Virus record (IMG/VR): IMGVR_UViG_3300044213_000107
Coordinates: 124,001 to 188,000 of that record
Reading direction: 5' to 3' (one strand)
Length of the DNA stretch: 64,000 nucleotides
The notes under the pieces were generated by a model, which saw only the letters and a program-made list of their open reading frames with translations, did not search any database and was not told the origin of the DNA. The translations under genes were made by a program, and so were the position numbers. Below are positions 9,165 to 63,572 of the stretch, in pieces. Position 1 is the first letter of the stretch; the number at the start of each line of letters is the position of its first letter.

Positions 9165-9478
9165 TATGGTTTCTCCGCTTGATATCCTGGATACATGCTA
9201 GGAGCATTAGTTCTTATATCTGCAGGATTTTTTCTATGGTGCATATCGTCGCCTCCAGGAAAGGCCGCCGAAAGTGGGGCAACAATTTCATTTGGTTTGT
9301 TCGCATATTCAAGCTCGTTTGTCATACCAGATAGTTGTTTAATGATTGTAAGTTCGTCGGTTGTTGAATCAGGAGGATTTATAACTAAGTCAACTGTTGC
9401 AATTTCTTGTTCTTGTTGCTCGGCTGAATTTTGATCAACTAGATCAATAACTGTTCTTATAATGTCTGTAATCTTCAT
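9164..9478 (-). CDS. Hypothetical late protein
   Basis: 104-aa ORF with TAAATA 4 nt upstream of the ATG. Confidence 0.7.
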   Translation of the reverse strand: MKITDIIRTVIDLVDQNSAEQQEQEIATVDLVINPPDSTTDELTIIKQLSGMTNELEYANKPNEIVAPLSAAFPGGDDMHHRKNPADIRTNAPSMYPGYQAEKP

Positions 9479-51786: not shown

Positions 51787-51958
51787 CTTCATCTCCAAAA
51801 TCTGCAGAATCAATTTGATCTTGCCAGTATACACGAGCCTCGGCTTCATTGTCAAAGGTTTCCAACACCTTCATTCCACCAAGAGGATGCGGAAACCACA
51901 CCAAGAATTTTCCGCTGTCCTCATCTTGTGTACAGTACAATTCTACCGGTTCGTTCAT
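51773..51958 (-). CDS. Small acidic early protein
   Basis: 61 aa directly downstream of a consensus promoter. Confidence 0.65.
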   Translation of the reverse strand: MNEPVELYCTQDEDSGKFLVWFPHPLGGMKVLETFDNEAEARVYWQDQIDSADFGDEDELR

Positions 51959-52050
51959 ACAACCACCGCTTTCGTTAATATGTGTATATTATAACACCAA
52001 AAGAAAACCCTGTCAAACACAGGGTTTTTGGGTGTTGTACAAAAACAACA
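51959..52050 (-). promoter_or_regulatory. Early regulatory cassette, copy C
   Basis: TGTTG-N8-CAACA 52033-52050; hairpin; perfect TTGACA-17-TATAAT. Confidence 0.9.
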
Positions 52051-52821
52051 CTAGAAATACTGGCAATTTGTGCGTGGAAAAAAGCACTCATTTTGGCGCA
52101 AAGGCTTTCCCTTCCAAGTTTCGCAAATTGCGGCTTTTCCAAGTCCCATGGCCAAACTATAAACAAAATTTTGATTTGCCATTACCAAATTTGCACCTGC
52201 AACAATGCCAGCAAGTTCTAAAAAGTCTGCTACCGGGCGATACTCAATCGCCACACCCACGGTCTGGACAAACTCTGCATGCTCGGCCGGGCTGCCTACA
52301 AATATGCCGTTGGCGCCAAGATCACCATCGGCCACAATTTCACGCCATAGAGCATCACCGTTTGGATCTCGATAACGTGCAGTTCTTGAGACCACAATTG
52401 GTTGAGTTTCAATTGGGTCTGCTTCCAACCAAGGTGTATCATAGTCCTGCATGGCAAATGGCAAACCAAAAGTACGGTGATATGCCTCCACATAGTTGCC
52501 TTCAAAGCCTCGCCACAGCACACCTCTAAAACGATCCAGATCCACATCGGGTTCTGACATGCCGGTTCTCCAATCGCCAAAGCTCTGAATATATGATTGT
52601 CGCCGCAACAAAGGTACTAACTGATAGTAATCTTGTTCTGTGAGACGTCCTCGATGTGCTGGATCAACTTCGTCGGGACGATATCCATACTGGCTTACAC
52701 AATTTTCAATGTTGTTTAATGCCACTAGAAACATGGCATTGTTTTCTGCTGCCATTTTTTTTACTACAGAGAGAGAATAAATCAAGTCTCCCAAGGTTCC
52801 TGAGTGCCGATAAGTTGTCAT
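52051..52821 (-). CDS. GT9 (heptosyltransferase)-like glycosyltransferase
   Basis: HSGTLGDLIYSL, DFLELAGIVAGANLVMANQ..YSLA.GLGK; start reset (ATGA overlap). Confidence 0.6.
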   Translation of the reverse strand: MTTYRHSGTLGDLIYSLSVVKKMAAENNAMFLVALNNIENCVSQYGYRPDEVDPAHRGRLTEQDYYQLVPLLRRQSYIQSFGDWRTGMSEPDVDLDRFRGVLWRGFEGNYVEAYHRTFGLPFAMQDYDTPWLEADPIETQPIVVSRTARYRDPNGDALWREIVADGDLGANGIFVGSPAEHAEFVQTVGVAIEYRPVADFLELAGIVAGANLVMANQNFVYSLAMGLGKAAICETWKGKPLRQNECFFPRTNCQYF

Positions 52822-53372
52822 GGTTTTGTATACTTCCAAAGTCCAAGATGTGGGTTGATGTCTGCATCAGGCAACAGTTCTGCAACTGCTTGTTTCACTC
52901 CAGGCCATGCCCAATCATCACCGGCCAACATACTGCCAGGTTTGACTTTCTGGAGCCACTTTGTGATGTCGTTGACAACATCTTCATACTCGTGACTGCC
53001 GTCAATCAATACAAAGTCTAAACTATTGTCGGCGTATTGTTCGACTGCTGCCATGCTAGATAAACGAACAGGATGCAGAATATGGCTTAGGCTTCGTGTG
53101 TTAGTTAAAAACTCATCATAAAGCGTATCATTGACCACTGCAGGATCTTGTTGATGAACATCTTCTGCCAAGCTGCCTTTCCATGTATCTACACAATCAA
53201 CACGAATGTTTTTTCCACTATTAGCAATTACTACTCCAAGATAACAACTGCTTCGTCCGCGCCAGGATCCTATTTCAACAAAGTGTGCTGTGTCTGGCGC
53301 TAGTTGTACCGCAGCGTCGTATATAGATTCGTAGTTAAACCAGCCTTGTATGTTTTGATAAAAATGTTCCAT
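52818..53372 (-). CDS. Class I SAM methyltransferase (Methyltransf_24-like)
   Basis: VEIGSWRGRS, FVLIDGSH.Y..V..DI..W..KVKPG..LAGDD. Confidence 0.88.
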   Translation of the reverse strand: MEHFYQNIQGWFNYESIYDAAVQLAPDTAHFVEIGSWRGRSSCYLGVVIANSGKNIRVDCVDTWKGSLAEDVHQQDPAVVNDTLYDEFLTNTRSLSHILHPVRLSSMAAVEQYADNSLDFVLIDGSHEYEDVVNDITKWLQKVKPGSMLAGDDWAWPGVKQAVAELLPDADINPHLGLWKYTKP

Positions 53373-54247
53373 TATAGTACCTTTAAAATTTCTTCGGTTA
53401 TTTTTGCAGTATCAAAGTTATTATTGCAAGGTGTGTTGCCTTTACTGCATACTAAATGACTCACTGGACGCTGTTGATGATCATTACAACCACGACAATC
53501 TTCTAGCGTTTGTACGGCAACACCACGGGATCCTGGAGGTAGTATTACTTCGGGGCGCAGATGTGTAAGTAGTGCAATAATCTGTGTACCACTGGCAGCT
53601 GCACACCAGTATGGTCCCGAGTCTATACCCGCAAAGGCTCGGGCACCGTTGCATAGCCACATTAGTTCTTGATTGTTAAATCGTGCACGTGCATCAACAA
53701 ATAAAGGATGATCAACAAAATTATCAGTCTGACCGCCAACACACACAACCTTAAAGTCAGCACGTTCTTCAAACAGTTTTGTAAATACATCTAACCAAAC
53801 CGCCATTGTAATGTTTTTAGCAGTCCAGTGCCAGTTACGCATGTGCACAACAATATATCTATCAAGTTCATTTTCATAACAAAAATTCAATACACGTGTT
53901 TTATCTTCGTCGCCGGGAAACAACTCAATCTGTGGAATTAAAGTGTTTGCGCCAAACGCACGGAACATATAGCTCGAAAGATAATTTTCAGTTGGATTTA
54001 ACTCATAGGCATTATCTAAATTTATAAACAAGTCCCAGCGATCAACGTCAGGCACCTGGTTAACAGGGAAAATATTTCTAATATGTGGGTTGTTGCGATA
54101 TACTTCAGCAAAGTCTGTAGCAATATCAATATTTGCGTTAGATCCATATCTGGTTTTTAATTCACGTACAACCGCCGTGCTCATAATAACATCACCGATA
54201 GCGGCACGTCGTTGTACTAATATATTAATAGGTTGTTCTAATTTCAT
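53372..54247 (-). CDS. Glycosyltransferase family 9-like
   Basis: RRAAIGDVIMST, FAGIDSGP..CAAA. Confidence 0.85.
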   Translation of the reverse strand: MKLEQPINILVQRRAAIGDVIMSTAVVRELKTRYGSNANIDIATDFAEVYRNNPHIRNIFPVNQVPDVDRWDLFINLDNAYELNPTENYLSSYMFRAFGANTLIPQIELFPGDEDKTRVLNFCYENELDRYIVVHMRNWHWTAKNITMAVWLDVFTKLFEERADFKVVCVGGQTDNFVDHPLFVDARARFNNQELMWLCNGARAFAGIDSGPYWCAAASGTQIIALLTHLRPEVILPPGSRGVAVQTLEDCRGCNDHQQRPVSHLVCSKGNTPCNNNFDTAKITEEILKVL

Positions 54248-55296
54248 CTGTCAAGTGCTTGTGCAATTAAATTGGTAAATTCGTGATCGGGTCTTTGCCG
54301 TAATAATAAATTCTTGTTATGTTGCAGAATAGGCATTGATTGTTGATACGCAGACTTTATAACAGATTTTGGTTGTTGTAAAAACGCTAACATACTTTGT
54401 GTAAATCTAAATAATCGTTCAGCATTGTCTTCAATGTCATCATAACTTTCGTCAATTATACTACTAAATGTAATATAACCCAAACTTCTTAGATACCGTA
54501 ATGAATAAGCAGGGCCCAGATACATAAACAATTGGTAATAGTGAATGGCATTAAAAACTTTTTCACTTAAAAATACACCAGTGTCGTAGAATGTATCTGT
54601 AATTATGCCTAGATAACTGTCAAGATAAAACTTTCTAGGAGTTTGGTAAAACTCAATGGTATCATCTAATGGTGGTAATGGCACACGATTTTGTATGGTG
54701 TTGCAGGTTTCAATGATATGGCTGTGTGCAGACTCGGGAAAACGAGCAATTAAAAAATCACTGGGTATACGACTGACCACGCATTTGTAATTTACTAGAT
54801 TGTCTTTTATCAAATCATTTTTTATAAGATTGGCTAAAATATATCTGCGTGGATAAAGATCTTTGCTGCTGGCCCAATAAAACTTGTGCGGTCTTTCTAC
54901 AGGAAAGTCTTGCCAATTGGTATATGATGATTGATTAACATACTCTTGCCAGTGTAGTGTACTAACATAATCAAATATCAACATTCTGTAGTAAGGAAAT
55001 TTTGGTTTGACGGTTATGCGAAAATCATCACCAGTTAATCTTCCGTTGAATACGATTATGGGATTTGGTCTTGCAGAATAAAAATCATTTATTGGCTTAA
55101 ACCAATGATCGTATTCTTCTAGATTTTGAAACAGGCCCATGAACACAATCAGTGTGTGATCGTTGGCAATTGACGCTTCAACTTCGGGCATAAAATCCCA
55201 CATGTATTCGGTGTGTTGTGTAAAGAATTTATGTACAACAAAATTATCTGTGGGTATTTCTAATCTAAGTTCATACTCACCAGTATTGTAAATCAT
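54244..55296 (-). CDS. Putative glycosyltransferase (GT10-like SEK motif)
   Basis: IITDT..FLSEKV..AI...LRSLGY.TF..IDESYD. Confidence 0.5.
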   Translation of the reverse strand: MIYNTGEYELRLEIPTDNFVVHKFFTQHTEYMWDFMPEVEASIANDHTLIVFMGLFQNLEEYDHWFKPINDFYSARPNPIIVFNGRLTGDDFRITVKPKFPYYRMLIFDYVSTLHWQEYVNQSSYTNWQDFPVERPHKFYWASSKDLYPRRYILANLIKNDLIKDNLVNYKCVVSRIPSDFLIARFPESAHSHIIETCNTIQNRVPLPPLDDTIEFYQTPRKFYLDSYLGIITDTFYDTGVFLSEKVFNAIHYYQLFMYLGPAYSLRYLRSLGYITFSSIIDESYDDIEDNAERLFRFTQSMLAFLQQPKSVIKSAYQQSMPILQHNKNLLLRQRPDHEFTNLIAQALDR

Positions 55297-55652
55297 TGGC
55301 TTGCGTGGTCCTGTTTTATTTCACGCACAGGGTCATTGAGTATTTCAGCGATGGCATTTTTATATCTAACACGATAATTATTAATATCTCTTATTTCTAG
55401 CGCACGGCGTCCTATCTCAGCAAGATCAACTCCGTCTAAACGACATTTTTTAAAATCGTCTTCGAGATTCCAAATACTAAAATGAATACGTTCTAGTTCA
55501 TATAAATTATCTTGTATTAGCTCTATTGGCAATTTATCGATTTCAGTTTGATAAAAATCCAATTCTGCTTGATTTGCTCCATTGGTTTTTGTGTGCTTTA
55601 CACGAGCAATGGTATACCTATCAACTAATTCAATTACCGGGAACTTGAACAT
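55293..55652 (-). CDS. Helical hypothetical protein typical of glycan loci (DUF6165-like, from memory)
   Basis: ELVDRYTI...IWNLED...A..I...N..R...KN pattern. Confidence 0.55.
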   Translation of the reverse strand: MFKFPVIELVDRYTIARVKHTKTNGANQAELDFYQTEIDKLPIELIQDNLYELERIHFSIWNLEDDFKKCRLDGVDLAEIGRRALEIRDINNYRVRYKNAIAEILNDPVREIKQDHASQ

Positions 55653-56856
55653 CTATAGTGGCCTTTGGAAAATATTTTACAAATACATCATTTGCATTGT
55701 TTCTACGTTCTAGAATCCTGCGTTTAATTTCTGTATAAAAATTCCAAGCAAGTGGCACAAATGCTATTCGATCATTATTTGTAAAACTATCTAGGTATTC
55801 TGATCCCACAATAAGACATTTTTGTCCCGGAGTATAGTGTCCTTGTTTAAGTGGATTATCGTCGACAACACAGTCTAATGGAAATTTAATATAGTTCAAT
55901 ACAGTATTGCCTTTGGCAGCTGCGCCATAACCAACTAGATGATAGCCCTGCGACTTTAAATCTTGTAAAGTGTTTGTTAATACCGTCATGTTTTCTTTGA
56001 CTTCTTGGGCCCATTGATGATAGTAGTCTGCAGATAACAACCCTAGTTCACATTCGCGAGCAATTAAGTTTTCGATGCGAGCAGGATTTCCACGTTCGTG
56101 GCTTATAACAAATATATAACTTGTTCCATGTATTGGTGTTTTTTGCACATCAACTAGGTGCATACCTGCTCTTTTACAAAGCTCATGCATGCTGTTGATA
56201 TTGTAAAAATTTACATGCTCATGGTATATTGTATCAAATTCACCGTTTGGTACCATATCTGCTTGGCTTGTCTGTACAAAAAACAAGCCGCCGGGTGCTA
56301 GTAAAGGTCGAAGTGCTTGCAAATACTCCAACGGAGCAGGATTATGTGCAAAACTGTTTTGTGCGACAATTATGTCAAACTTTTGATCAATTGTTTTTGC
56401 TAGATCTGGGCCAAAAAAATCACACCAGACCTGATGGTTTGCACTACTCGACGGGTAAAGATTTTCAGCAGGGTCTATGCCATATGTGTTTAAGCCTAAT
56501 TTTTTAAAAGCATTTAACTGGCTACCATCGTTGCAGCCAATATCAAGCACATTACCGGGCCAATGGTGAATGTATTCACGAGCAAATCTAGCAAACCATT
56601 CCATGTAGTCAAGATATGTTTTGGTTGTACCACTAACATACAGATAATTTTTGTAGATAATCTCGGGATCAACTACATGTGTTAGTTGTAGATGAAAGCA
56701 ATGACTGCACCTATTAACTGCCAGTGGATAAGAGCTTTCAGTGTCATCTTTGTTGACGTAATTATTTGCTAATGGTTGGTCTGTTAGATCTAATGTTAAT
56801 TCTAAATCTTCTGAGCCACAAGCAAGACATTCATTTAATTCCGTTAATGTGTTCAT
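55630..56856 (-). CDS. NDP-hexose C-methyltransferase family protein
   Basis: Zn-binding CLACG..C..C, LDIGCNDG, YHEHVNFY, GYGAAAKG; start reset to MNTLT. Confidence 0.88.
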   Translation of the reverse strand: MNTLTELNECLACGSEDLELTLDLTDQPLANNYVNKDDTESSYPLAVNRCSHCFHLQLTHVVDPEIIYKNYLYVSGTTKTYLDYMEWFARFAREYIHHWPGNVLDIGCNDGSQLNAFKKLGLNTYGIDPAENLYPSSSANHQVWCDFFGPDLAKTIDQKFDIIVAQNSFAHNPAPLEYLQALRPLLAPGGLFFVQTSQADMVPNGEFDTIYHEHVNFYNINSMHELCKRAGMHLVDVQKTPIHGTSYIFVISHERGNPARIENLIARECELGLLSADYYHQWAQEVKENMTVLTNTLQDLKSQGYHLVGYGAAAKGNTVLNYIKFPLDCVVDDNPLKQGHYTPGQKCLIVGSEYLDSFTNNDRIAFVPLAWNFYTEIKRRILERRNNANDVFVKYFPKATIDVQVPGN

Positions 56857-56857
56857 A

Positions 56858-57568
56858 TTAGTTTTTAATAGCAGCTCCGTTGGGAGCAATGGCACCTTCT
56901 ACGCCAAGTAAAGGTACTTCTTGTACATGTTCGGCGTTTAAAAAACGATATAGTACATGTTCAATGTCAGTGTATCCACCTTGCGCAACACGTTCGGCAA
57001 AAAAGTTTAAACTATCATCATATACTTGAATGATTTCTTCTGTTAGTGCAGTGGGCCATGACCAAAGTCTAGCCATATACTGTGCTGCAGTTTGTGTTAC
57101 TTCAAAAGGAAACTGGCTTTTATATTTTGGCCCAATAACTATTTTTGAGTTATCGTCATACAAGGACAAATTAAAATCACTGTTTAACAAGTATCTACCA
57201 GACATTTTGTGTATGCGGTCAACATCTGCAAAATCGCCGTCATCTTGACATTGCCTAATGGTCCTACCAAAACACATAATCTCAGTGGAGTTTTTTACTA
57301 CATCCCAGTTGTCTGTTCCGTTATAGATTGATTGCACTGCAGCATCTGTAGTATAGTCAATGAACACATCACTGTTATCTTCTAATATTTGGCTTTGTTC
57401 GTCGGTTAACGGTACTCCAGTGCATTCCATAATCACTATCTTGCTACCAGGAGCATGTTGATGTATGCTCTGAATAGTTGCCAGTGTTTGTACCAAACGT
57501 TCTTCGGGCGTGTATACCCCAAATCTGCTGTTAATAGCAGAAGTTACAATAAAACAATGTCGTGTCAT
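56858..57568 (-). CDS. Putative glycan-related protein (GT-like)
   Basis: FIVTSAI..., HKMSGRY; located in the cluster. Confidence 0.55.
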   Translation of the reverse strand: MTRHCFIVTSAINSRFGVYTPEERLVQTLATIQSIHQHAPGSKIVIMECTGVPLTDEQSQILEDNSDVFIDYTTDAAVQSIYNGTDNWDVVKNSTEIMCFGRTIRQCQDDGDFADVDRIHKMSGRYLLNSDFNLSLYDDNSKIVIGPKYKSQFPFEVTQTAAQYMARLWSWPTALTEEIIQVYDDSLNFFAERVAQGGYTDIEHVLYRFLNAEHVQEVPLLGVEGAIAPNGAAIKN

Positions 57569-58599
57569 TTGCTTAACCACCTATCATTAGCAAGAGTCCA
57601 ACGAACTACTTCTTCGATTCTATCGCTGAGTTTAATCTTTGGCTCCCACCCTAGCGATTTTAACAGTCCGCCATCTAACGCATATCGTAAATCATGCCCG
57701 GGACGTGATCCGTGGAAGTCTACCATTTCATAGTTTAACACACGGTCCTGCGCACGAGCAATCATTTGTGCTAGGGTTAGGTTATCAATTTCTTCTGTGC
57801 CTACTAGGTTAAATTTAGGACAATGTGCATGCCCATAATCACCTTGGTGTTTGTAGTCTTTAAGACTTAAAATAAACATTAAACCTTCAGCAACATCCCG
57901 AGCATGAATATACATGCGTGTGCCAGCGTGTCTACGTGTAGGATCGGCATGAATAAACACCTTTTCGCCGTCTCTTGCACGTTGGATAACCATTGGGATA
58001 AATTTTTCTGGATGTTGACGTTCGCCAAACACATTCATTGTATGTGTTACCACAATTGGCATCTTGTATGTGTTTTCGTAGGCTACACAAAATTCCTCTG
58101 CGGCTGCTTTACTTGCTGAATAAGGGTTTGTGCTGTTATAGCGATCGTATTCTTTATACGAAACACCCGGAGGTGCTACACCAAAGATCTCATCTGTAGA
58201 GAAATATACAAATCGTTCTAGGTCAGGCAAATGTCGACGTGCGTAATCTAACATGTTTACAGTACCAACTACGTTGTCTTGCACAAACTCCATAGGGTAT
58301 TGGATGCTACGATCAACGTGCGATCCTGCAGCTAGATGTAAAATAATATCAACTGCACCAATTTGTTTTACAATCATTTCATTAAGCTCGGCTTTGAGAT
58401 CATGAAATACAATCCGTAGTCTACCAGCAACTTCTGCAGGGTCATGTTCTTGTAGCATGTCGTGTAGTCGGTTTAGGTTTCCGCTGATATCTAATCGATC
58501 CAAACATACAATATTCCAGTCTGTGTCTCTTAAGATCTTATCAATAACATGGTGCGCAATAAAACCGGCACCGCCAGTAATCAATACATTTTTTGTCAT
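57565..58599 (-). CDS. NDP-glucose 4,6-dehydratase (RmlB-like)
   Basis: GGAGFI, HLAAGSHVDRS, STDE, YSASK, RPGHDLRYA. Confidence 0.92.
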   Translation of the reverse strand: MTKNVLITGGAGFIAHHVIDKILRDTDWNIVCLDRLDISGNLNRLHDMLQEHDPAEVAGRLRIVFHDLKAELNEMIVKQIGAVDIILHLAAGSHVDRSIQYPMEFVQDNVVGTVNMLDYARRHLPDLERFVYFSTDEIFGVAPPGVSYKEYDRYNSTNPYSASKAAAEEFCVAYENTYKMPIVVTHTMNVFGERQHPEKFIPMVIQRARDGEKVFIHADPTRRHAGTRMYIHARDVAEGLMFILSLKDYKHQGDYGHAHCPKFNLVGTEEIDNLTLAQMIARAQDRVLNYEMVDFHGSRPGHDLRYALDGGLLKSLGWEPKIKLSDRIEEVVRWTLANDRWLSK

Positions 58600-58614
58600 A
58601 GTTTCTTTCAATTG

Positions 58615-59472
58615 TTAATTATAGCAATAGGGCGGCAATAGGTCAACTGCTGTAGTATCAGCTGATTCAATTACCCATTTACTAAATTTTGGGTCCTGCA
58701 TGGCTCGGGGAAAATAACTGTCTAACTGCACAGGTTGGTAGCTGTCGTTGGCAGTACGTGCCCAACTCTTGCCTTCTCGAACACTGGCTTCGGGATCAAT
58801 TTGTGCAATAAATTCTGGATAGTTTACTTCTTGGTGTGCAAAACTCTGTGCTTTGTTTACTAGCCAATCCCGATCGCCCATGTAGCCAAAATGCCACCCC
58901 GCATGTTCAACCACGGCAATACCGTCTCGACGATACTGATAAGGATGATCAAAAAACTGAAAACGCATCTGTCTAAATGAATCTGGCAACAAGGTATCAA
59001 ACACTGCACGACGCCCGGCCATGGACCAAATGCCATATCTGTCAGGATCAAGTTTCATGTTGTTGAATTTAAAATTATACAGTGGCATGCGCAGTGCATA
59101 CACAGTTTCCGGAGTATTGATCATGTATCGTACTGCGTCAGCACGTACGATTTCATCACAGTCAGAAATCATAATAAGATCATTTGGATTAGCTTGTTCA
59201 ATGCCACGAAAGATTTGGTTGCGTTGATATATGTCATTGACCCAAGCATCGGGGTTCCTTGGCATATCCTCAACTTGTATATAAATGATTTTATCAGCCC
59301 AGGGTTTATACCGATCGGCATTTTCTTGGTAATAAAAAGGTTTGTCCCGACTAGTGAATGTAGTATTGGATTCAACCAAAACAAAATGGTCAACCACATC
59401 ATATAGTTCACGTAGTCTAATTTCAAGTAAATCAAATTCGTTGTGGAATGGAAAACAGTCGTAGATTTTCAT
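58615..59472 (-). CDS. Glycosyltransferase family 17 (beta-1,4-GlcNAc transferase-like)
   Basis: YDCFPFHNEFDLLEIRL.EL...VD.FVLVES; ISDCDEI; GWHFGY. Confidence 0.88.
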   Translation of the reverse strand: MKIYDCFPFHNEFDLLEIRLRELYDVVDHFVLVESNTTFTSRDKPFYYQENADRYKPWADKIIYIQVEDMPRNPDAWVNDIYQRNQIFRGIEQANPNDLIMISDCDEIVRADAVRYMINTPETVYALRMPLYNFKFNNMKLDPDRYGIWSMAGRRAVFDTLLPDSFRQMRFQFFDHPYQYRRDGIAVVEHAGWHFGYMGDRDWLVNKAQSFAHQEVNYPEFIAQIDPEASVREGKSWARTANDSYQPVQLDSYFPRAMQDPKFSKWVIESADTTAVDLLPPYCYN

Positions 59473-59477
59473 ATACA

Positions 59478-59496
59478 TATTTAACTATAATAAATA
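59478..59496. promoter_or_regulatory. Back-to-back TAAATA late-type promoter motifs at a strand switch
   Basis: Minus-strand TAAATA at 59483-59478; plus-strand TATAATAAATA at 59486-59496. Confidence 0.55.
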
Positions 59497-59522
59497 CTTG
59501 ATGTCAAATTTTCAAGGATCAT

Positions 59523-60164
59523 ATGCACGCCGTAGCTTCAATTAATACCAGTGATTACCAAGTTTTAGCCGATCTAACAGATGCTCCAAAACGTGAGTTT
59601 TGCGACCGTTATGGCTACGAATTCTTTGTGTTAAAAGAATTAAAATACAGCCCAATTATGGGTTTTAATAAAGTTGCTTATGTACTTGATATTTTTCAGC
59701 AACGTCCGGACATTGAATGGTTGTTGTTTAGTGAGTGCGATGCTACAATAACAAATCTAACTATTAGCATTGATGACAAGATCGACGATGATTACCATTT
59801 TATTATTCCTGTGGATCGTTTGAACCTAAATGCCGGAAACTTTTTGGCTCGCAACACTGAGCAGGGTCGTGCGTATCTGCAGATGATTGTGGACTCAGAA
59901 GACCAATACAAATCTGCAGAATGGGCCGAGCAACAGGTAATAATTGATACTATAGATCAATACACTGACATAGTTAAAATTGTAGCACAAAGAGAAATGA
60001 ACAGTTATGAACCGGCGATTTACGATTATTGTGATGCTCGCTTTGATATATTGGGCAACAGCGGTGCCTGGGAACCCGGAGACTGGATCGTACACTGGCC
60101 AGGAACTTACTTACCAACTAGGCTTGCACGAGCACAAGCAATTGCTCAGGAGATCGTTCGATGA
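59523..60164 (+). CDS. Glycosyltransferase family 34 (GMA12/MNN10-like)
   Basis: K.EFCDRYGY.F, WLLFSECDA.ITN, NAGNFL.RN, WAEQQ, DWIVHWPG. Confidence 0.8.
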   Translation: MHAVASINTSDYQVLADLTDAPKREFCDRYGYEFFVLKELKYSPIMGFNKVAYVLDIFQQRPDIEWLLFSECDATITNLTISIDDKIDDDYHFIIPVDRLNLNAGNFLARNTEQGRAYLQMIVDSEDQYKSAEWAEQQVIIDTIDQYTDIVKIVAQREMNSYEPAIYDYCDARFDILGNSGAWEPGDWIVHWPGTYLPTRLARAQAIAQEIVR

Positions 60165-60988
60165 AAATACTTATTACCGGAGTAACAGGATTTTTGGGTC
60201 GTAGCCTACAAGAGTTTTATGACCATAAAAAACACGATATTTGTCTTGTGTATAGAGGTTTTAATTTAACAAATACACTCAACAGTTATAAACCAGATTT
60301 GATCTTACATTGTGCTGGAGAAATTTACAAACCCGATTTGATGTACCGTACTAACATTGGCATGGTGGAAGAAATATTAGAATGGGTTAGACGCAATCCT
60401 GCTGCAAGAATGGTACAAATAGGATCAAGCAGCGAATATGGTACTGTTAAGCGTGCCACACGAGAAACCGATGCTATTGCTCCTGTTGATGTGTATTCTG
60501 CTACCAAAGGAGCCGCAACACTGCTGTGTCAAGGATACAGTCGCCAATTTGATTTACAAGTTGCAGTGGCTCGTATATACTCAGGGTATGGTGCGCATGA
60601 ACGTCCACACAGATTATTTCCACGTTTATATCGTGCATTTTTTCAAGATGAACCAATGACGTTATTTGATGGGGTACATGATTTTATCTACATAGATGAT
60701 TTTTTACGTGGCATTGATCTGTTGGTAAACGCAGAACGTTGGCCATCGGGAGAAATAGTAAACTTTGGGTCAGGCACACAATATCGTAATATTACTGTAT
60801 TAAAACTTTGGGAAAATATTACAGGACGTACTGCCCCCGTTGAATACATCAATAGATTTAGCAAGCCGTTTGAAACTGATTTTTGGCAATGCGATACCAC
60901 TTATGCTAAACAGCAATATGGATTTGTAACCGAATACAGTTTAGAACAAGGCATAGAAGATTTTATAAAGAAAATGGAAGTTAAGTAA
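60161..60988 (+). CDS. NAD-dependent sugar epimerase/reductase
   Basis: GVTGFLG, GSSSEYG, YSATK, HDFIYIDD. Confidence 0.9.
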   Translation: MKILITGVTGFLGRSLQEFYDHKKHDICLVYRGFNLTNTLNSYKPDLILHCAGEIYKPDLMYRTNIGMVEEILEWVRRNPAARMVQIGSSSEYGTVKRATRETDAIAPVDVYSATKGAATLLCQGYSRQFDLQVAVARIYSGYGAHERPHRLFPRLYRAFFQDEPMTLFDGVHDFIYIDDFLRGIDLLVNAERWPSGEIVNFGSGTQYRNITVLKLWENITGRTAPVEYINRFSKPFETDFWQCDTTYAKQQYGFVTEYSLEQGIEDFIKKMEVK

Positions 60989-61548
60989 TGTTTTGCCAAC
61001 CAGGATATAATTTTTTTGCAAGAGAACTAGCATCGAGTACATACAACTATTTAGAAATTGGGGTGTTCAACGGTGATAGCATAGCAGGTCTAGCTAAAAT
61101 TCACCCAAATAAAATTGTATTTGGAGTAGACCCTTTTATCGAAGATGGATGCACAACCGAACACACACAAGTCAGTGAAAATGAAACAATGACCACCCAA
61201 CGTGAAAACACCTATGCTAACACCAACGGATTAGAAAATATTGTTTTATTTGAAATGTTAAGTTCAGATTTTGCAAATATGTTAACTGATGAAATGATCG
61301 CCGACATGAATGTAGCATGGGTGTTAATTGATGGCAGTCATCATTATCCAGATGTAATTAGTGATGTGCACTTGGCTATGAGACTTATCGGGGATCGAGA
61401 AGGCGGAATAGTTTTTGACGATTTAAATTTAGAAGGTGTTGCTCAAGCGCACAAAGAATTTTTAAACACATACCAAGATCGTATATCAAGTGCACGTGAT
61501 ATTTACGATACTCATCCCGGACACATCATTGCATATAAAATAAATTAA
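60988..61548 (+). CDS. Class I SAM methyltransferase
   Basis: YLEIGVFNG, LIDGSH.Y..V..D, IVFDD. Confidence 0.85.
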   Translation: MFCQPGYNFFARELASSTYNYLEIGVFNGDSIAGLAKIHPNKIVFGVDPFIEDGCTTEHTQVSENETMTTQRENTYANTNGLENIVLFEMLSSDFANMLTDEMIADMNVAWVLIDGSHHYPDVISDVHLAMRLIGDREGGIVFDDLNLEGVAQAHKEFLNTYQDRISSARDIYDTHPGHIIAYKIN

Positions 61549-61549
61549 C

Positions 61550-62167
61550 ATGACTGCACTAGAACGAAGAATTATTGATATAACGTATCAAGAACGCCTA
61601 AGTCATTTGAGCAGTACGCTAAGTGCGGCACCAATACTTGAAGAAATATATAACATCCGTAAACCCGATGAAGTTTTTGTACTTAGTAACGGGCATGCAG
61701 GATTGGCATTATATTGTGTACTCGAACAAAGATTTACCACTGTAAACGCAGTGGAACTACTGCACCGACATGGAATACACCCAAGTCGCGACATAGACCA
61801 TCATTTGTATTGTTCAACTGGCAGTTTAGGGTCGGGACTGCCTATTGCTGTTGGGCATGCACTAGCAACTCCAGATAAAAAAGTATACTGTATGATCAGC
61901 GACGGAGAATGTGCCGAAGGATCAATTTGGGAATCATTACGTTTTGTCTACGAGCATAAAATTGACAATTTAGAAATATACGCAAATATAAATGGCTTAG
62001 GTGCATACGATGCCATTAACATAGATTATCTTGTGCGTAGACTACAAAGTTTTTTACCACGCATAAACATTAGGATCAGCAAACCATTAAAATGGTCGTT
62101 TGCCCAGGATCTTCTTACACATTATTATGTGCTTAAAAAACAAGACTACCAGGAGATCATGGCATGA
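61550..62167 (+). CDS. Transketolase-like N-terminal (ThDP-binding) subunit
   Basis: SHLSS, LSNGHA, TGSLGSGL..AVG, SDGEC.EG..WE..N. Confidence 0.9.
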   Translation: MTALERRIIDITYQERLSHLSSTLSAAPILEEIYNIRKPDEVFVLSNGHAGLALYCVLEQRFTTVNAVELLHRHGIHPSRDIDHHLYCSTGSLGSGLPIAVGHALATPDKKVYCMISDGECAEGSIWESLRFVYEHKIDNLEIYANINGLGAYDAINIDYLVRRLQSFLPRINIRISKPLKWSFAQDLLTHYYVLKKQDYQEIMA

Positions 62168-62646
62168 GAAAAGAATGTGCTCAACTGTTGTTAGAAGAAA
62201 TGTCAGTAAATGATAAAATTCGTGTGATCACTGCTGATCTCGGGTTTGGCATTCTAGACCACATACGAAATGCTTACCCAGATCGTTTTTATAATGTGGG
62301 TGCTGCAGAACAACTAATGATTGGTGTTGGCATAGGAATGGCCGAAGAAGGTCTTGTACCTGTTTGCTATTCAATGAGTAGTTTTTTATTGTATAGGCCT
62401 TTTGAGTTTTTGCGTAACTATGTCAACTACGAGCACATACCAGTTAAGTTATTAGGGTCTGGTCGCGATCAAGATTATAGTCACGATGGTGTTAGTCACT
62501 GGGCACACGACGACGAGCTAGTATTAAACGCATTACCAAATATTAAAATGTATAAGCCTAATAATTTAGATGAGTTAAACATTAATTTTAATGAATACAT
62601 TAATAGTTCCAATCCTGCTTATTTAAATCTAAGGAGAGCAATTTGA
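62164..62646 (+). CDS. Transketolase-like pyrimidine-binding subunit
   Basis: TADLG, NVGAAEQ.MIG...G.A..G, RPFEF.R, DG.SH. Confidence 0.9.
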   Translation: MRKECAQLLLEEMSVNDKIRVITADLGFGILDHIRNAYPDRFYNVGAAEQLMIGVGIGMAEEGLVPVCYSMSSFLLYRPFEFLRNYVNYEHIPVKLLGSGRDQDYSHDGVSHWAHDDELVLNALPNIKMYKPNNLDELNINFNEYINSSNPAYLNLRRAI

Positions 62647-63572
62647 GTACTAAAGTAGTTTATGTAACAGGATGTCTTGGATTTATTGGATATCATGTAA
62701 CTGTTGCTTGTTTAGAACGTGGTTGGTATGTTAGAGGCATTGACAATATAACTTATGCAAGTAATATTGATTTTTTGCCTAAATTACAAGCATACCCAAG
62801 ATTTTATTTTGAGCAAACAGATATAAACAACATTGAAAAGTTATACGAGTGCGATTATATTATAAACACCGCCGCAGAAACTCACGTCGACAATAGTATT
62901 GTTAGCAGTGATGTATTCTTGCGTAGCAATATTAATGGCGTACACCGACTATTAGAATTAATTAAAGCCAGTAAACAAAAACCTACTTTATTGCATTTTA
63001 GCACAGATGAAGTCTACGGAGACATTGTCGAAGGTGCACACACAGAAACAGATTTGCTAAAACCAAGTAATCCATACTCAGCAACCAAAGCTGCAGCTGA
63101 TATGTTGATTAGTGCCTGGGCCAGAACATTTGATGTACCATATGTTATGGTTCGGCCAACAAATAACTATGGTATAGGACAATACACAGAAAAGTTCATT
63201 CCTCATAGTATCAAATACTATATGCTAGGTCGAGCTATTCCTTTACACAATGCCGGTACTCCTAGACGAACATGGCTGCACGTAAGCGATACCGCTAGTG
63301 CAATTATTGCTATTATCGATGCCGGCGTAAAAAATGAAATTTATAACATCTCAGGAAACTACGAAACTGATAATTTAACTGTTGCTCAACGTATTGTTGA
63401 ACTAGCAGGCGGTGCAGGAGAATTTGATTTGAGCATTACTCGCCCTGGCCAAGATGTGCGTTACGCTGTTGATGACACCAAAATAAAAGCCCTAGGTTGG
63501 CAACCTAGAGCTGATTTTGACACTGAACTTGCATTAATTGTAGATTACTACAAAAACAAGTTTGTTTGGTAA
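62643..63572 (+). CDS. Second NDP-glucose 4,6-dehydratase (RmlB-like), TTG start
   Basis: GCLGFIG, AAETHVDNS, STDEVYG, YSATK, RPGQDVRYA. Confidence 0.92.
   Translation: MSTKVVYVTGCLGFIGYHVTVACLERGWYVRGIDNITYASNIDFLPKLQAYPRFYFEQTDINNIEKLYECDYIINTAAETHVDNSIVSSDVFLRSNINGVHRLLELIKASKQKPTLLHFSTDEVYGDIVEGAHTETDLLKPSNPYSATKAAADMLISAWARTFDVPYVMVRPTNNYGIGQYTEKFIPHSIKYYMLGRAIPLHNAGTPRRTWLHVSDTASAIIAIIDAGVKNEIYNISGNYETDNLTVAQRIVELAGGAGEFDLSITRPGQDVRYAVDDTKIKALGWQPRADFDTELALIVDYYKNKFVW

What the first reader, a model, noticed from the sequence alone, without database searches (positions are those of the whole stretch)
52051..63572. 11.5-kb phage glycosylation cluster
Seen: 15 contiguous genes comprising GT9-like (x2), GT10-like, GT17, GT34, a further GT-like ORF, three methyltransferases, two RmlB-like dehydratases, an epimerase/reductase, a transketolase-like pair and a DUF6165-like ORF. 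Known: virion glycosylation is established for chloroviruses and Mimiviridae and for some mycobacteriophages. Inference: the phage builds its own methylated oligosaccharide for capsid or fibre decoration, DNA hypermodification or host-surface remodelling.
Basis: partly seen in the sequence, partly recalled or inferred. Interest (0 to 1): 0.6.

Follow-up and report, generated by a model that had tools for sequence, protein, structure and literature searches.

The report
Jumbo-phage sugar-making and glycosyltransferase gene cluster
A freshwater jumbo phage carries 15 tightly packed genes for making unusual methylated and branched sugars and joining them into a glycan, and related phages share the cluster's core; the kind of cluster is known in aquatic phages, this enzyme set is new, and what the glycan is attached to is still unproven.

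Summary
Window 52051-63572 contains 15 tightly packed ORFs in two divergent operons: nine on the minus strand and six on the plus strand. Eleven have significant family hits. Two more are glycosyltransferases (GTs) by predicted fold. Two labels (the second GT9-like ORF and the DUF6165-like ORF) remain weak leads.

The block is not contamination. It lies inside a 260.7-kb phage contig. An independent freshwater sample bridges its left junction with zero mismatches. About 25-30 related viral contigs carry it at the same genomic position.

Three genes are always adjacent in the close relatives: an RmlB-type 4,6-dehydratase (median 83% identity, the best-conserved gene in the neighbourhood), a GT-A glycosyltransferase, and a TylC3/MtmC-type sugar 3-C-methyltransferase. 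GTs, methyltransferases and a second module vary around this core. The second module is GT34, a short-chain dehydrogenase/reductase (SDR), a methyltransferase, a minimal split transketolase and a second dehydratase.

All 15 proteins look soluble and acidic. No lipid-carrier, flippase or polymerase genes are present. No hydroxymethyl-pyrimidine or TET enzymes were found in the held 74% of the genome.

My best reading is a cytoplasmic pathway that builds a methylated, C-branched deoxysugar glycan, most likely on phage proteins (about 0.4). Host LPS-core remodelling is the main rival, and DNA modification is less likely. I rate it a new variant of a known kind, with interest about 0.5.

The parts
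52051..52839 (-). g01, a 262-aa ORF (probably 256 aa, starting at the ATG at 52821). Possible GT9-like glycosyltransferase; last gene of the minus operon.
   Evidence: No Pfam or NCBIfam hit. The Atlas gives a lead to GT9 clusters (0.95, 190 shared features) and holds the protein from residue 7 onward. Conserved in 17 related loci at 50-61% identity. A profile search of PDB found nothing, and hhalign against the g03 family gave probability 2%.
52818..53372 (-). g02, a class I SAM methyltransferase (Methyltransf_24). Probably a sugar O-methyltransferase.
   Evidence: PF13578, E 4.7e-20, with a weak TylF match. Present in only a few relatives.
53372..54247 (-). g03, a GT9-family (heptosyltransferase-like) GT-B glycosyltransferase with an invariant C-terminal Cys4 cluster.
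   Evidence: PF01075 E 0.0025 and TIGR02201 E 3e-8, both below their cut-offs. The family profile hits WaaF (1psw) at E 7.8e-11, GT9 (3tov) at 4.7e-5 and TibC at 0.016; the TibC match extends over the CxxC. C251, C254, C267 and C274 are invariant in 18 sequences.
54244..55296 (-). g04, a 350-aa GT-B-fold glycosyltransferase of unresolved family (GT10 is only a lead).
   Evidence: The model has pLDDT 66. Foldseek gives weak GT20/VldE matches. VIA-align gives Z 11.4 to 6eji and many other GT-B chains, with FUT9 at Z 7.6. The Atlas GT10 score is 0.80. No Pfam hit.
55293..55652 (-). g05, a 119-aa conserved small protein of unknown role (sub-threshold DUF4254 and DUF6165 matches).
   Evidence: DUF4254 E 0.0054 and DUF6165 E 0.13. 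Twelve homologues with 77% mean column identity.
55630..56895 (-). g06, an NDP-4-keto-hexose 3-C-methyltransferase homologue (TylC3/MtmC/TcaB9 type). Core gene.
   Evidence: PF08421 + PF13489 + PF08484. PDB hits: MtmC 4rv9 at E 6.8e-62, TcaB9 and KijD1 at 1e-40 to 1e-43. Homologues in all 40 related loci.
56858..57580 (-). g07, a 240-aa GT-A-fold glycosyltransferase. Core gene, always between g08 and g06 in the close relatives.
   Evidence: Model pLDDT 92.3, pTM 0.91. Foldseek PDB matches are glycogenin and alpha-1,3-GalT at E about 1e-7, TM about 0.5. The best BFVD match is a Synechococcus phage S-SRM01 protein at TM 0.89. No significant Pfam hit.
57565..58611 (-). g08, an NDP-glucose 4,6-dehydratase-like SDR (RmlB type; the likely start is the ATG giving 344 aa). 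Core gene and the most conserved one.
   Evidence: TIGR01181 at 236 bits, below its cut-off of 365. PDB RmlB hits at E 3e-47, with STDE and YxxxK aligned. Median 83% identity in 25 loci. 64-65% identical to the 'nucleotide-sugar epimerase' of cyanomyoviruses. More than 120 clusters at 82% identity or above in metagenomes.
58615..59478 (-). g09, a GT17-family glycosyltransferase. First gene of the minus operon.
   Evidence: PF04724, E 4.4e-27. Found in 15 or more related loci. Only 7 distant phage records carry one.
59479..59522 (.). Divergent 44-nt control region between the two operons.
   Evidence: The sequence has ATAAATAC 33 nt before the g10 start, matching the late-type motif class, and it overlaps a TATAAT. 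On the minus strand, TTGAAA-17-TATTAT lies at 59515-59487. These are consensus matches only.
59523..60164 (+). g10, a GT34-family GT-A glycosyltransferase. First gene of the plus operon.
   Evidence: PF05637, E 2.9e-14. Co-inherited with g11 and the transketolase pair.
60161..60988 (+). g11, a short (275-aa) SDR epimerase/reductase with no dehydratase Asp-Glu pair.
   Evidence: PF01370, E 1.3e-32. The best PDB hit is 6zl6, deposited as an 'Epimerase domain-containing protein' (a UDP-GlcA 4-epimerase from my memory), E 5e-25, with SSSEYG and YxxxK.
60988..61548 (+). g12, a second Methyltransf_24 SAM methyltransferase.
   Evidence: PF13578, E 5.4e-9. In relatives an FkbM-type methyltransferase stands beside it or in its place.
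61550..62167 (+). g13, a minimal transketolase-like TPP-binding (PP) subunit of 205 aa.
   Evidence: PF02775 and PF00456. PDB transketolase hits at E 1e-14, with the SDGE...N TPP-motif region aligned. 113 clusters (50% identity) at E<=1e-30, nearly all about 200-225 aa. Distant members also sit in phage-like contigs and are paired with a Pyr subunit.
62164..62646 (+). g14, a minimal transketolase-like pyrimidine-binding (Pyr) subunit of 160 aa, with no transketolase C-terminal domain.
   Evidence: PF02779, E 4.8e-18. Matches the split-transketolase C-terminal chain 6yaj at E 1.3e-18 over residues 40-193 only, with the AEQ motif aligned.
62643..63572 (+). g15, a second NDP-glucose 4,6-dehydratase-like SDR (309 aa). 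Last gene of the plus operon.
   Evidence: TIGR01181 at 290 bits, below its cut-off of 365. PDB hit 2hun at E 1.4e-68, with STDE and YxxxK. Orthologues at 46-71% identity occur only in loci that also have the transketolase pair.
52004..52028 (-). Terminator-like hairpin right after the g01 stop, marking the left boundary of the cluster.
   Evidence: A 10-pair stem followed by a T-run. Contigs of related strains diverge at 52004-52038 (loose ends in run X2).

Best explanation
The block is a phage-encoded, cytoplasmic glycan-building pathway that starts from host nucleotide-glucose.

Module 1 is the conserved core on the minus strand. The RmlB-type dehydratase g08 makes an NDP-4-keto-6-deoxyhexose. 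The TylC3/MtmC-type enzyme g06 adds a methyl branch at C-3. The GT-A enzyme g07, which is always wedged between them, transfers that sugar or primes the acceptor.

Module 2 is on the plus strand. The second dehydratase g15 supplies another 4-keto sugar. The minimal two-subunit TPP enzyme g13/g14 modifies it by forming a C-C bond. This would resemble the AviB1/AviB2 or YerE two-carbon branching reaction, or a ketol transfer. The SDR g11 then reduces or epimerises the product, g12 methylates it, and the GT34 enzyme g10 transfers it.

The remaining GTs extend the chain: the GT9 enzyme g03, g01, the GT-B enzyme g04 and the GT17 enzyme g09. The methyltransferase g02 caps it.

I think the acceptor is most likely a phage protein, probably a virion surface protein. 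That would give the particle a strain-variable glycan coat.

What the analyses support directly: the gene content, the catalytic motifs, the predicted folds, the conservation and modularity across relatives, the predicted solubility, and the absence of lipid-linked export genes from the cluster.

What is inferred: the order of reactions, the sugar identities, the reaction of the TPP enzyme, and above all the acceptor.
For: Enzymology
- Both dehydratases keep the Ser/Thr-Asp-Glu and YxxxK motifs.
- g06 has all three domains of sugar 3-C-methyltransferases and matches MtmC at E 7e-62.
- g13 and g14 keep the TPP-motif region and the activating Glu region.
- There is literature precedent for two-subunit or single TPP enzymes that add a two-carbon branch to NDP-4-keto sugars (PMC4753412).

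Modularity
- The triad g08-g07-g06 is adjacent in all close relatives.
- The transketolase pair always travels with g10 and g11, and with g15 wherever the contig reaches that far.
- The GT and methyltransferase complement varies between relatives. It includes GT4, UDP-galactopyranose mutase, an RmlD-like SDR, an FkbM methyltransferase and an NDP-heptose-like arm. This is what one expects of a surface glycan under diversifying selection.

Cytoplasmic and soluble
- No hydrophobic segment typical of a membrane span was found, and pI values are 4.4-6.3 for all 15 proteins.
- None of the 15 ORFs hit a Wzx, Wzy, WaaL or priming-transferase family.

Leaning towards a protein acceptor
- The g03 family has four invariant cysteines (CxxC-12-C-6-C).
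- The match to the protein heptosyltransferase TibC runs over that CxxC, to about TibC residue 340. The match to the LPS enzyme WaaF stops just before it.
- TibC's substrate-recognising iron finger uses Cys339, Cys342, Cys358 and Cys370 (PMC4358343).
- The plus arm carries the ATAAATAC motif at the modal distance seen before the sheath, tube, adaptor and virion genes.
- Some relatives embed a prolyl-hydroxylase-type 2OG oxygenase inside the core.
- g08 is more conserved (median 83%) than the neighbouring helicase (75%) and AAA protein (76%).

Real phage DNA
- An independent run bridges the left junction with 0 mismatches.
- Runs from at least 10 freshwater studies other than the probable source sample hold the cluster.
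Against: - No glycan, glycoprotein or transcript has been observed.
- No acceptor has been identified.
- The cluster sits beside replication and restriction-modification genes, not beside structural genes. This differs from mycobacteriophage virion-glycosylation genes.
- The minus arm, including the core triad, has sigma-70-type promoter matches that suggest early rather than late expression, and the plus-arm late motif overlaps a TATAAT.
- The TibC correspondence rests on match end-points and E 0.016, not on an inspected alignment or a structure.
- GT9 enzymes classically act on LPS core, and relatives carry an NDP-heptose-like arm, which fits the LPS rival equally well.
- No ketoreductase is obvious in the minimal three-gene versions of the core.
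- No nucleotidyltransferase was found in the held 74% of the genome.
Confidence: 0.4

Rival explanations
1. Host-surface remodelling. The enzymes act at the cytoplasmic face of the inner membrane on the host's lipid A-core or another envelope glycolipid. They add heptose-like and methylated deoxysugars, and the host's own export machinery then displays the product. This would mask receptors, blocking superinfection or loss of progeny on cell debris. It is the classical reading of 'LPS genes' in cyanophages.
For: - The g03 profile matches ADP-heptose:LPS heptosyltransferase II at E 7.8e-11, and g01 has a GT9 lead.
- Relatives carry, right after g01, a PfkB kinase, a cytidylyltransferase-like protein, a cupin and an SDR. 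Together these resemble an NDP-heptose arm.
- The variable content (Glf, GT4, RmlD-like) resembles O-antigen loci.
- LPS-core GTs are soluble or peripheral and need no dedicated flippase, so the absence of Wzx/Wzy is compatible.
- Sigma-70-type promoters before the minus arm and before g08 would allow early expression.
- The literature reads such clusters this way (bioRxiv 10.1101/655167).
Against: - There is no lysogeny signal here. The context is a large, apparently lytic jumbo phage in which the cluster is a conserved core feature.
- The strongest conservation falls on the dehydratase.
- GT17, GT34 and glycogenin-like GT-A folds are not typical LPS-core enzymes.
- The Cys4 insertion in g03 is shared with the protein-directed TibC rather than with WaaF.
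- The plus arm carries the late-type motif.
- This genome lacks the heptose arm.
Confidence: 0.28
2. DNA hypermodification. The GTs decorate hydroxymethylated bases of the phage DNA with a complex glycan to evade restriction.
For: - The cluster lies in the replication and nucleotide-metabolism region, next to helicase, AAA and restriction-modification methylase genes.
- Phage GT-A and GT-B enzymes with accessory epimerases are known to build diverse DNA glycans (bioRxiv 10.1101/2023.12.21.572611).
- The g04 model aligns with the T4 alpha- and beta-glucosyltransferases at Z 9.0-9.7, although so do dozens of other GT-B enzymes.
Against: - No thymidylate-synthase-type hydroxymethylase, ThyX or TET/JBP oxygenase was found in the held 261 kb. 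Caveats: 26% of the genome is missing, and the TET control search rang nowhere.
- All the GTs are acidic, with pI 4.4-5.7.
- Six GTs, three methyltransferases and C-branched sugars seem far beyond the DNA glycans I know of. I judged this from memory and did not check glycan sizes in the paper.
- Ordinary metagenome assemblies from at least 10 further freshwater studies hold the DNA readily.
Confidence: 0.1
3. The pathway does not decorate a macromolecule. It would make a soluble glycoside or secondary-metabolite-like product, or mainly divert and drain host nucleotide-sugar pools as host takeover.
For: - The closest characterised relatives of g06 (MtmC, TcaB9, KijD1) and the precedents for TPP branching enzymes come from antibiotic deoxysugar pathways.
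- No acceptor has been identified.
Against: About six GTs of different folds imply stepwise assembly of an oligosaccharide. No aglycone-forming genes (PKS, NRPS or terpene) were seen among the cluster ORFs or in relatives.
Confidence: 0.07

Closest known systems
Sugar or 'LPS' gene clusters of T4-like cyanophages (Kyanoviridae: S-SM2, S-SRM01, S-SCSM1, ACG-2014f; P-SSM2 from memory)
   Same: - g08 is 64-65% identical to their 'nucleotide-sugar epimerase' (T4-GC 265).
- S-SM2 has an epimerase, a transferase, a transketolase-domain protein and a carbohydrate kinase next to it. The kinase is 35% identical to the PfkB protein of this phage's relatives.
- S-SRM01 has a g07 homologue (TM 0.89, 27% identity) plus a GT and a sulfotransferase.
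- The target is unknown there too.
   Different: - None of the three cyanophage regions I fetched has the dehydratase-GT-A-C-methyltransferase triad. The only cyanophage C-methyltransferase hit is 25% identical.
- GT17 homologues there are about 25% identical.
- The host and virus lineage differ: the terminase here is nearest to PA5oct and Phosso-type jumbo phages.
Autonomous glycosylation machinery of chloroviruses and mimiviruses (established knowledge, from memory)
   Same: Both have virus-encoded nucleotide-sugar 4,6-dehydratases, several soluble GT-A-type GTs and sugar methyltransferases that could build a methylated, virus-specific glycan in the cytoplasm. The g07 model has fold-level matches to Megaviridae, chlorovirus and other giant-virus GTs.
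   Different: Those are eukaryotic viruses with experimentally determined capsid or fibril glycans. Here there is only fold-level resemblance (TM 0.5-0.6) and no evidence of virion glycans.
Mycobacteriophage virion glycosylation (Freeman et al. 2023, as cited in PMC12619734)
   Same: Phage-encoded GTs that glycosylate capsid and tail-tube proteins. This is the proposed kind of function.
   Different: From memory, those systems have one or two GTs beside the structural genes and use host sugars. This cluster has 15 genes with its own sugar-tailoring enzymes and lies away from the structural genes.
Actinomycete deoxysugar tailoring: TylC3/MtmC/TcaB9/KijD1 3-C-methyltransferases, and the TPP branching enzymes AviB1/AviB2 and YerE
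   Same: g06 has the full three-domain architecture and strong sequence similarity. A dehydratase followed by a C-methyltransferase is the canonical route to 3-C-methyl-6-deoxyhexoses. A two-subunit TPP enzyme acting on an NDP-4-keto sugar has precedent.
   Different: g13/g14 are transketolase-like rather than pyruvate-dehydrogenase-E1-like or acetolactate-synthase-like. No 2,3-dehydratase, aminotransferase or aglycone genes are present. The context is a phage.
Bacterial autotransporter heptosyltransferases (BAHT family: TibC, Aah) versus the LPS heptosyltransferases WaaC and WaaF (GT9)
   Same: g03 is a GT9 homologue. It has an invariant Cys4 cluster at about the position of TibC's iron finger.
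   Different: g03 has 291 aa and therefore no room for TibC's N-terminal beta-barrel. The Cys spacing differs (CxxC-12-C-6-C versus CxxC-15-C-11-C). The TibC match is weak (E 0.016). The donor sugar is unknown.
Phage DNA-glycan clusters (T4 alpha/beta-GT; the 5mYOX- or ThyS-linked GTs of Pyle et al.)
   Same: Phage GT-A and GT-B enzymes with accessory sugar enzymes, located near replication genes.
   Different: The defining base-hydroxymethylating enzyme was not found here.
GT-rich clusters in other metagenomic large aquatic phages (moraphages, PMC12619734; Lake Biwa LBVGs, bioRxiv 10.1101/655167)
   Same: Large aquatic phages with several core GTs or LPS/capsule-like clusters. LBVG_1 shares the S21 gene and the Atu_ph07-type terminase affinity.
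   Different: Those papers do not describe this gene set. Whether this phage belongs to either group was not tested.

Membership tests
NDP-glucose 4,6-dehydratase (RmlB, extended SDR): g08 and g15 | Catalytic Ser/Thr-Asp-Glu triad and the YxxxK motif, with an N-terminal Gly-rich NAD site | tested here: met
   STDE and YxxxK align with those of solved RmlB enzymes in both proteins. The Gly-rich motif (GGAGFI or GCLGFIG) is at the N-terminus.
NDP-glucose 4,6-dehydratase (RmlB, extended SDR): g08 and g15 | Score above the curated equivalog cut-off (TIGR01181, 365 bits) | tested here: not met
   236 and 290 bits. They are divergent members, so the nucleotide and sugar specificity is open.
Sugar 3-C-methyltransferase (TylC3/TcaB9/MtmC type): g06 | Zn-binding N-terminal domain + SAM methyltransferase domain + C-methyltransferase C-terminal domain | tested here: met
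   PF08421, PF13489 and PF08484 are all above their cut-offs. MtmC matches at E 6.8e-62 and TcaB9/KijD1 at about 1e-41.
Sugar 3-C-methyltransferase (TylC3/TcaB9/MtmC type): g06 | C-methylation of an NDP-4-keto sugar at C-3 | not testable with these tools
   Needs an enzyme assay.
Transketolase: g13 and g14 | PP domain with the TPP-binding motif, and Pyr domain with the cofactor-activating Glu | tested here: met
   The SDGE...N region aligns with human transketolase. The AEQ region aligns with the split-transketolase C-terminal chain.
Transketolase: g13 and g14 | Full-length architecture including the transketolase C-terminal domain, and family-level scores | tested here: not met
   Only PF02779 is found in g14 (160 aa), which matches residues 40-193 of a 341-aa chain. 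g13 has 205 aa. The best NCBIfam transketolase score is 78 bits against a cut-off of 488. I therefore file it as transketolase-like, not as a transketolase.
GT9 heptosyltransferase: g03 | Significant similarity to GT9 enzymes | tested here: met
   The single sequence is below threshold (17.6 versus 22 bits). The family profile hits WaaF at E 7.8e-11 and GT9 3tov at 4.7e-5.
GT9 heptosyltransferase: g01 | Significant similarity to GT9 enzymes or to g03 | tested here: inconclusive
   Atlas lead of 0.95. No Pfam or PDB hit. hhalign against the g03 family gives probability 2%, E 0.025.
BAHT protein heptosyltransferase (TibC/Aah): g03 | Four-Cys iron finger inserted in the C-lobe, N-terminal beta-barrel, dodecamer | tested here: inconclusive
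   An invariant Cys4 cluster is present, and the TibC match (E 0.016) spans the CxxC (TibC residues). At 291 aa the protein has no room for the beta-barrel.
GT17: g09 | Pfam PF04724 above the gathering score | tested here: met
   95.5 bits against 26, covering profile positions 74-216 of 348.
GT34: g10 | Pfam PF05637 above the gathering score | tested here: met
   53.8 bits against 23.
GT10 fucosyltransferase: g04 | Pfam PF00852 match or a specific structural match | tested here: not met
   No Pfam hit even at E<=10. The fold is GT-B, but FUT9 ranks only 50th at Z 7.6. The Atlas score of 0.80 is within the chance range.
GT8 / glycogenin-like retaining GT-A: g07 | GT-A fold, and sequence membership (PF01501) | tested here: inconclusive
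   The GT-A fold is confident and glycogenin is the top match, but TM is only about 0.5. There is no Pfam GT8 hit. I file it as a GT-A glycosyltransferase of unassigned family.
O-antigen / capsule (lipid-carrier) gene cluster | Priming phosphoglycosyltransferase, Wzx/Wzy or an ABC exporter, and a ligase | tested here: not met
   None of the 15 ORFs matches such families, and none has a membrane-span-like segment.
Phage DNA glycosyl-hypermodification system | An enzyme that makes 5-hydroxymethyl pyrimidines (ThyA-type hydroxymethylase, or 5mC methyltransferase plus TET/JBP oxygenase) in the genome | tested here: not met
   PF00303, PF02511 and PF12851 were not found in the 260.7-kb record. Caveats: the record is 74% complete, and the PF12851 control search rang nowhere.
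Phage virion-glycosylation system (mycobacteriophage type) | GT genes adjacent to capsid or tail-tube genes, and glycans detected on those proteins | tested here: not met
   The cluster is flanked by restriction-modification, replication and unknown genes. Detecting glycans is not possible with these tools.

The most novel reading that the evidence does not exclude
A cosmopolitan lineage of freshwater jumbo phages (contigs up to about 360 kb) glycosylates its own virion proteins with a self-made, strain-variable oligosaccharide. The glycan would contain a 3-C-methyl-6-deoxyhexose and a second C-branched or chain-extended sugar made by a phage-specific 'mini-transketolase'. A TibC-like, Cys4-finger GT9 enzyme would recognise the protein acceptor. 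This would be a bacterial-virus counterpart of the autonomous glycosylation machinery of chloroviruses and mimiviruses.
Probability: 0.25. Interest if true: 0.8.

Novelty: new variant of a known kind. Interest (0 to 1): 0.5.

Why it matters
Phage-encoded glycan clusters have been noted for twenty years (from memory, Sullivan et al. 2005), but their targets are almost never known. This cluster offers a well-defined, testable case.

- It has an invariant three-gene core that can be reconstituted in vitro: dehydratase, C-methyltransferase and GT-A.
- It has a compact two-subunit TPP enzyme family that, in the members I sampled, lies on phage-like contigs. Its chemistry on sugars would be new.
- It has a GT9 enzyme whose Cys4 insertion hints at protein recognition.
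- Metagenomes hold thousands of homologues, which allows co-variation and ecological analysis.

If the glycan coats virions, it would bear on phage-host recognition, particle stability and grazing or immune evasion in lakes. It would also add C-branched deoxysugar enzymes to the glycoengineering toolbox. If instead the glycan remodels host LPS, it documents an unusually elaborate receptor-masking strategy in a lytic jumbo phage.

Tried and rejected
- Megablast of the cluster against 50,697 phage records found no match.
- tblastn of the transketolase Pyr subunit against phages returned only bacterial-like fragments and unrelated dxs/transketolase genes.
- Profile searches of PDB sequences with the g07, g01 and g04 families found nothing meaningful, so I used structure prediction instead.
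- The g04 model is poor (pLDDT 66), and GT10 could not be confirmed.
- hhalign of the g01 family against the g03 family was inconclusive.
- DUF6165 for g05 is not significant.
- Own-genome searches found no NTP_transferase, PfkB or SIS_2 (GmhA-type) gene, so no phage-encoded sugar activation or heptose arm is visible in the held 74%.
- I considered and set aside the idea that the transketolase pair feeds sedoheptulose-7-phosphate into a heptose arm. In relatives the heptose arm occurs without the transketolase pair, while the pair always co-occurs with g10 and g11, and with g15 wherever the contig reaches that far.
- Host assignment from the S21 gene was inconclusive. The pattern-based hits were to Chitinophagales and Bacteroidota MAG contigs, which may themselves be viral. 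By analogy with LBVG_1 an LD12 host is also possible.
- No RNA run holds the stretch, so expression could not be checked.
- Host contamination or chimeric assembly is rejected. Phage genes lie on both sides, synteny holds in relatives, and an independent 943-nt contig bridges the left junction with no mismatch.
- The antisense ORF 51849-52529 (weak Ivy hit, E 0.0026) overlaps g01, so I regard it as spurious.

Full report
**What is there.** The window is bases 124001-188000 of a single 260,723-bp viral record with 38.5% GC. CheckV rates the record 74% complete. Window 52051-63572 holds exactly 15 ORFs. Nine are on the minus strand (52051-59478) and six on the plus strand (59523-63572). They diverge from a 44-nt spacer, and most neighbours overlap by 1-38 nt. 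GC content across the block (0.35-0.43) is like the rest of the genome. The surroundings are phage genes: virion proteins, a DnaB-type helicase and ribonucleotide reductase in the window, and sheath, tube, adaptor and terminase genes elsewhere.

**Gene by gene.** Significant family hits identify the following:
- Two Methyltransf_24 methyltransferases (g02, g12).
- A three-domain sugar C-methyltransferase (g06).
- Two RmlB-like SDRs (g08, g15) and a short SDR (g11).
- GT17 (g09) and GT34 (g10).
- The PP and Pyr halves of a transketolase-like enzyme (g13, g14).

Comparison with solved structures sharpens these labels. Both RmlB-like proteins align end to end with dTDP-glucose 4,6-dehydratases and keep the STDE and YxxxK motifs. 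g11 is closest to 6zl6, deposited as an 'Epimerase domain-containing protein' (a UDP-GlcA 4-epimerase from my memory), and lacks the dehydratase Asp-Glu pair. g06 matches the D-mycarose 3-C-methyltransferase MtmC at E 7e-62, and also TcaB9 and KijD1. g13 and g14 match transketolases only over the cofactor-binding cores. There is no transketolase C-terminal domain, and scores are far below the family cut-offs.

Four ORFs had no clear family.
- I aligned homologues of g07 and g04 and folded both.
- g07 gave a confident model (pLDDT 92). It has a GT-A fold, closest to glycogenin and alpha-1,3-galactosyltransferase among solved structures and to a protein of Synechococcus phage S-SRM01 among viral models.
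- g04 gave a poor model that nevertheless aligns with many GT-B enzymes. GT10 is no more than a lead.
- The g03 family profile hits the heptosyltransferase WaaF at E 7.8e-11.
- g01 has only an Atlas lead to GT9.
- g05 has only sub-threshold DUF4254 and DUF6165 matches.

**Not contamination, and not a one-off.** Runs from 12 studies, all freshwater metagenomes, hold the cluster DNA or part of it; one run may be the source sample and three hold only a small share. In one independent run a 943-nt contig with no mismatch spans 51456-52398, which covers the junction between the neighbouring methylase gene and g01. A scan of IMG/VR with g06 returned 40 viral loci. About 25-30 of them share the neighbourhood, with the same AAA-ATPase and helicase genes downstream. 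The g08 and g13 families each have thousands of close metagenomic homologues, on contigs up to about 360 kb. The terminase is nearest to PA5oct-type and Phosso-type jumbo phages.

**Anatomy across relatives.** ORF clustering of the 40 loci shows an invariant triad in the close relatives: g08 (dehydratase), g07 (GT-A) and g06 (C-methyltransferase). It is usually followed by GT9 (g03) and g01 and preceded by GT17 and GT34.
- g08 is the best-conserved protein of the neighbourhood, with median 83% identity against 75-76% for the helicase and the AAA protein.
- The plus-strand module (GT34, SDR, methyltransferase, transketolase pair, second dehydratase) is present as a unit in six loci.
- The remainder is mosaic. 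Relatives add a PfkB kinase, a cupin, a cytidylyltransferase-like protein and an SDR directly after g01, which together resemble an NDP-heptose arm.
- They also add a prolyl-hydroxylase-type 2OG oxygenase inside the core, radical-SAM/SPASM proteins, an FkbM methyltransferase, DUF5672, a GT4, UDP-galactopyranose mutase and an RmlD-like reductase.
- In the present genome the place of the heptose arm is taken by an Eco57I-type methylase fusion, and neither PfkB nor GmhA-type genes were found.
- Pieces of the system are shared with T4-like cyanophages. Their 'nucleotide-sugar epimerase' is 64-65% identical to g08. S-SM2 has a transketolase-domain protein and the kinase beside it. S-SRM01 has the g07 homologue.

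**The mini-transketolase.** A search of 1.8 billion representative proteins found 113 clusters at E<=1e-30, almost all 200-225 aa long. Members only 34-40% identical still lie in phage-like contigs. They are paired with a 155-160-aa Pyr subunit and sit next to GT2, methyltransferase and radical-SAM genes, or are fused to a homing-endonuclease domain. This looks like a compact two-subunit TPP enzyme family that, in the members sampled, lies on phage-like contigs. It always travels with a 4,6-dehydratase, an SDR, a methyltransferase and a GT. I therefore infer that it acts on the NDP-4-keto sugar, as AviB1/AviB2 and YerE do when they add two-carbon branches (PMC4753412). That is an inference, not a result.

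**Where does the glycan go?**
- Lipid-linked export: all 15 proteins lack membrane-span-like segments and are acidic, and no priming transferase, flippase, polymerase or ligase is present. A lipid-carrier O-antigen or capsule route is therefore unlikely.
- DNA: no ThyA-type hydroxymethylase, ThyX or TET/JBP enzyme was found. These enzymes define known DNA-glycan systems. This is limited by the missing 26% of the genome and by a silent control for TET.
- Protein, first hint: the g03 family has four invariant cysteines. The profile match to the protein heptosyltransferase TibC runs across the first CxxC, whereas the much stronger match to WaaF ends just before it. TibC's iron finger (Cys339, 342, 358 and 370) recognises its protein substrate (PMC4358343).
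- Protein, second hint: the genome has two upstream motif classes. [ACT]TAAATA[CT] is 14-fold enriched in the 80 nt upstream of genes and is strand-specific. It precedes the sheath, tube, adaptor and virion genes. TATAAT precedes mostly small ORFs. The plus arm has ATAAATAC at the typical distance, though it overlaps a TATAAT.
- Protein, third hint: the prolyl-hydroxylase-type oxygenase inside the core of some relatives recalls hydroxylation-dependent protein glycosylation.
- LPS core: GT9 ancestry and the heptose-like arm in relatives support this reading. So do sigma-70-type promoter matches before the minus arm and before g08.

I rate a protein (virion) acceptor at about 0.4, LPS or envelope at about 0.28, DNA at about 0.1 and other fates at about 0.07. 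The rest is unassigned.

**Comparison and novelty.** Virus-encoded glycan clusters are a known kind. Examples are the cyanophage 'LPS' genes, Lake Biwa viral genomes, moraphage core GTs, mycobacteriophage virion glycosylation, and the chlorovirus and mimivirus machinery. I found no description of this gene set.
- In the phage collection the C-methyltransferase has only seven distant hits.
- The mini-transketolase has none among bona fide phage isolates, apart from a weak match in S-SM2.

I therefore class the cluster as a new variant of a known kind, of moderate interest. It would be high interest if virion glycosylation with C-branched sugars were shown.

**Limits and compliance.**
- No expression data exist for this stretch.

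Noticed in passing
window 734-973 (-): The phage encodes a ribosomal protein S21 homologue (PF01165, E 6e-18). The Lake Biwa jumbo phage LBVG_1 was reported to carry the same gene. A pattern-based genome scan gave its nearest hits in Chitinophagales and Bacteroidota MAG contigs, which does not settle the host.
   Followed up: partly
window 47646-51855 (-): A 1163-aa Eco57I-type methylase fusion and an adjacent 248-aa N6-methylase-like ORF lie where relatives carry the PfkB / cupin / cytidylyltransferase-like / SDR (NDP-heptose-like) arm. A perfect TTGACA-17-TATAAT promoter match (52016-51988) precedes it. Contigs of related strains diverge exactly at 52004-52038.
   Followed up: partly
whole genome G000; examples at window 59487-59497, 9164-9478 and 2516-4075: There are two classes of upstream motif. 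[ACT]TAAATA[CT] (T4-late-promoter-like; 4.3 per kb upstream versus 0.3 per kb genome-wide; 42 sense versus 9 antisense) lies before structural genes. TATAAT lies 25-45 nt before mostly small ORFs (median 104 aa).
   Followed up: partly
L002:1375-2469 and L002:2457-3491 (genome about 216.5-218.6 kb): The large terminase appears to be split into two overlapping ORFs (364 and 344 aa). This could be a frameshift, an intron/intein remnant or a genuine split. I did not examine it.
   Followed up: no
L071 (genome 113344-114402, -): A further 352-aa ORF outside the cluster has a weak PHROG glycosyltransferase match and a late-type motif 27 nt upstream.
   Followed up: no
L001:1995-3116 (+) (genome 189495-190616): A radical-SAM/SPASM protein lies 2 kb downstream of the cluster. 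Relatives have a different radical-SAM/SPASM gene inside the cluster, and distant mini-transketolase loci also have radical-SAM neighbours.
   Followed up: partly
window 6336-7877 (-): A 513-aa Ser/Thr/Gly/Ala-rich fibre-like protein lies among the virion genes, with weak tail-fibre PHROG hits. It is a possible glycan acceptor, but this is pure conjecture.
   Followed up: no
genome 122563-122937 (-) and 34055-34438 (-) (L045, L046): Two cytidylyltransferase-like ORFs lie outside the cluster. One is just upstream of the window. They could be NMN or heptose-phosphate adenylyltransferases.
   Followed up: no
window 51849-52529 (+): A 226-aa ORF lies antisense to g01 and the intergenic region, with a weak Ivy hit (E 0.0026). 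It is probably not a gene.
   Followed up: no
L048:4801-7011: In a distant phage-like contig that carries the mini-transketolase pair, a radical-SAM gene is interrupted by an intein with a LAGLIDADG endonuclease. In another such contig the transketolase PP subunit is fused to a NUMOD4 domain.
   Followed up: no
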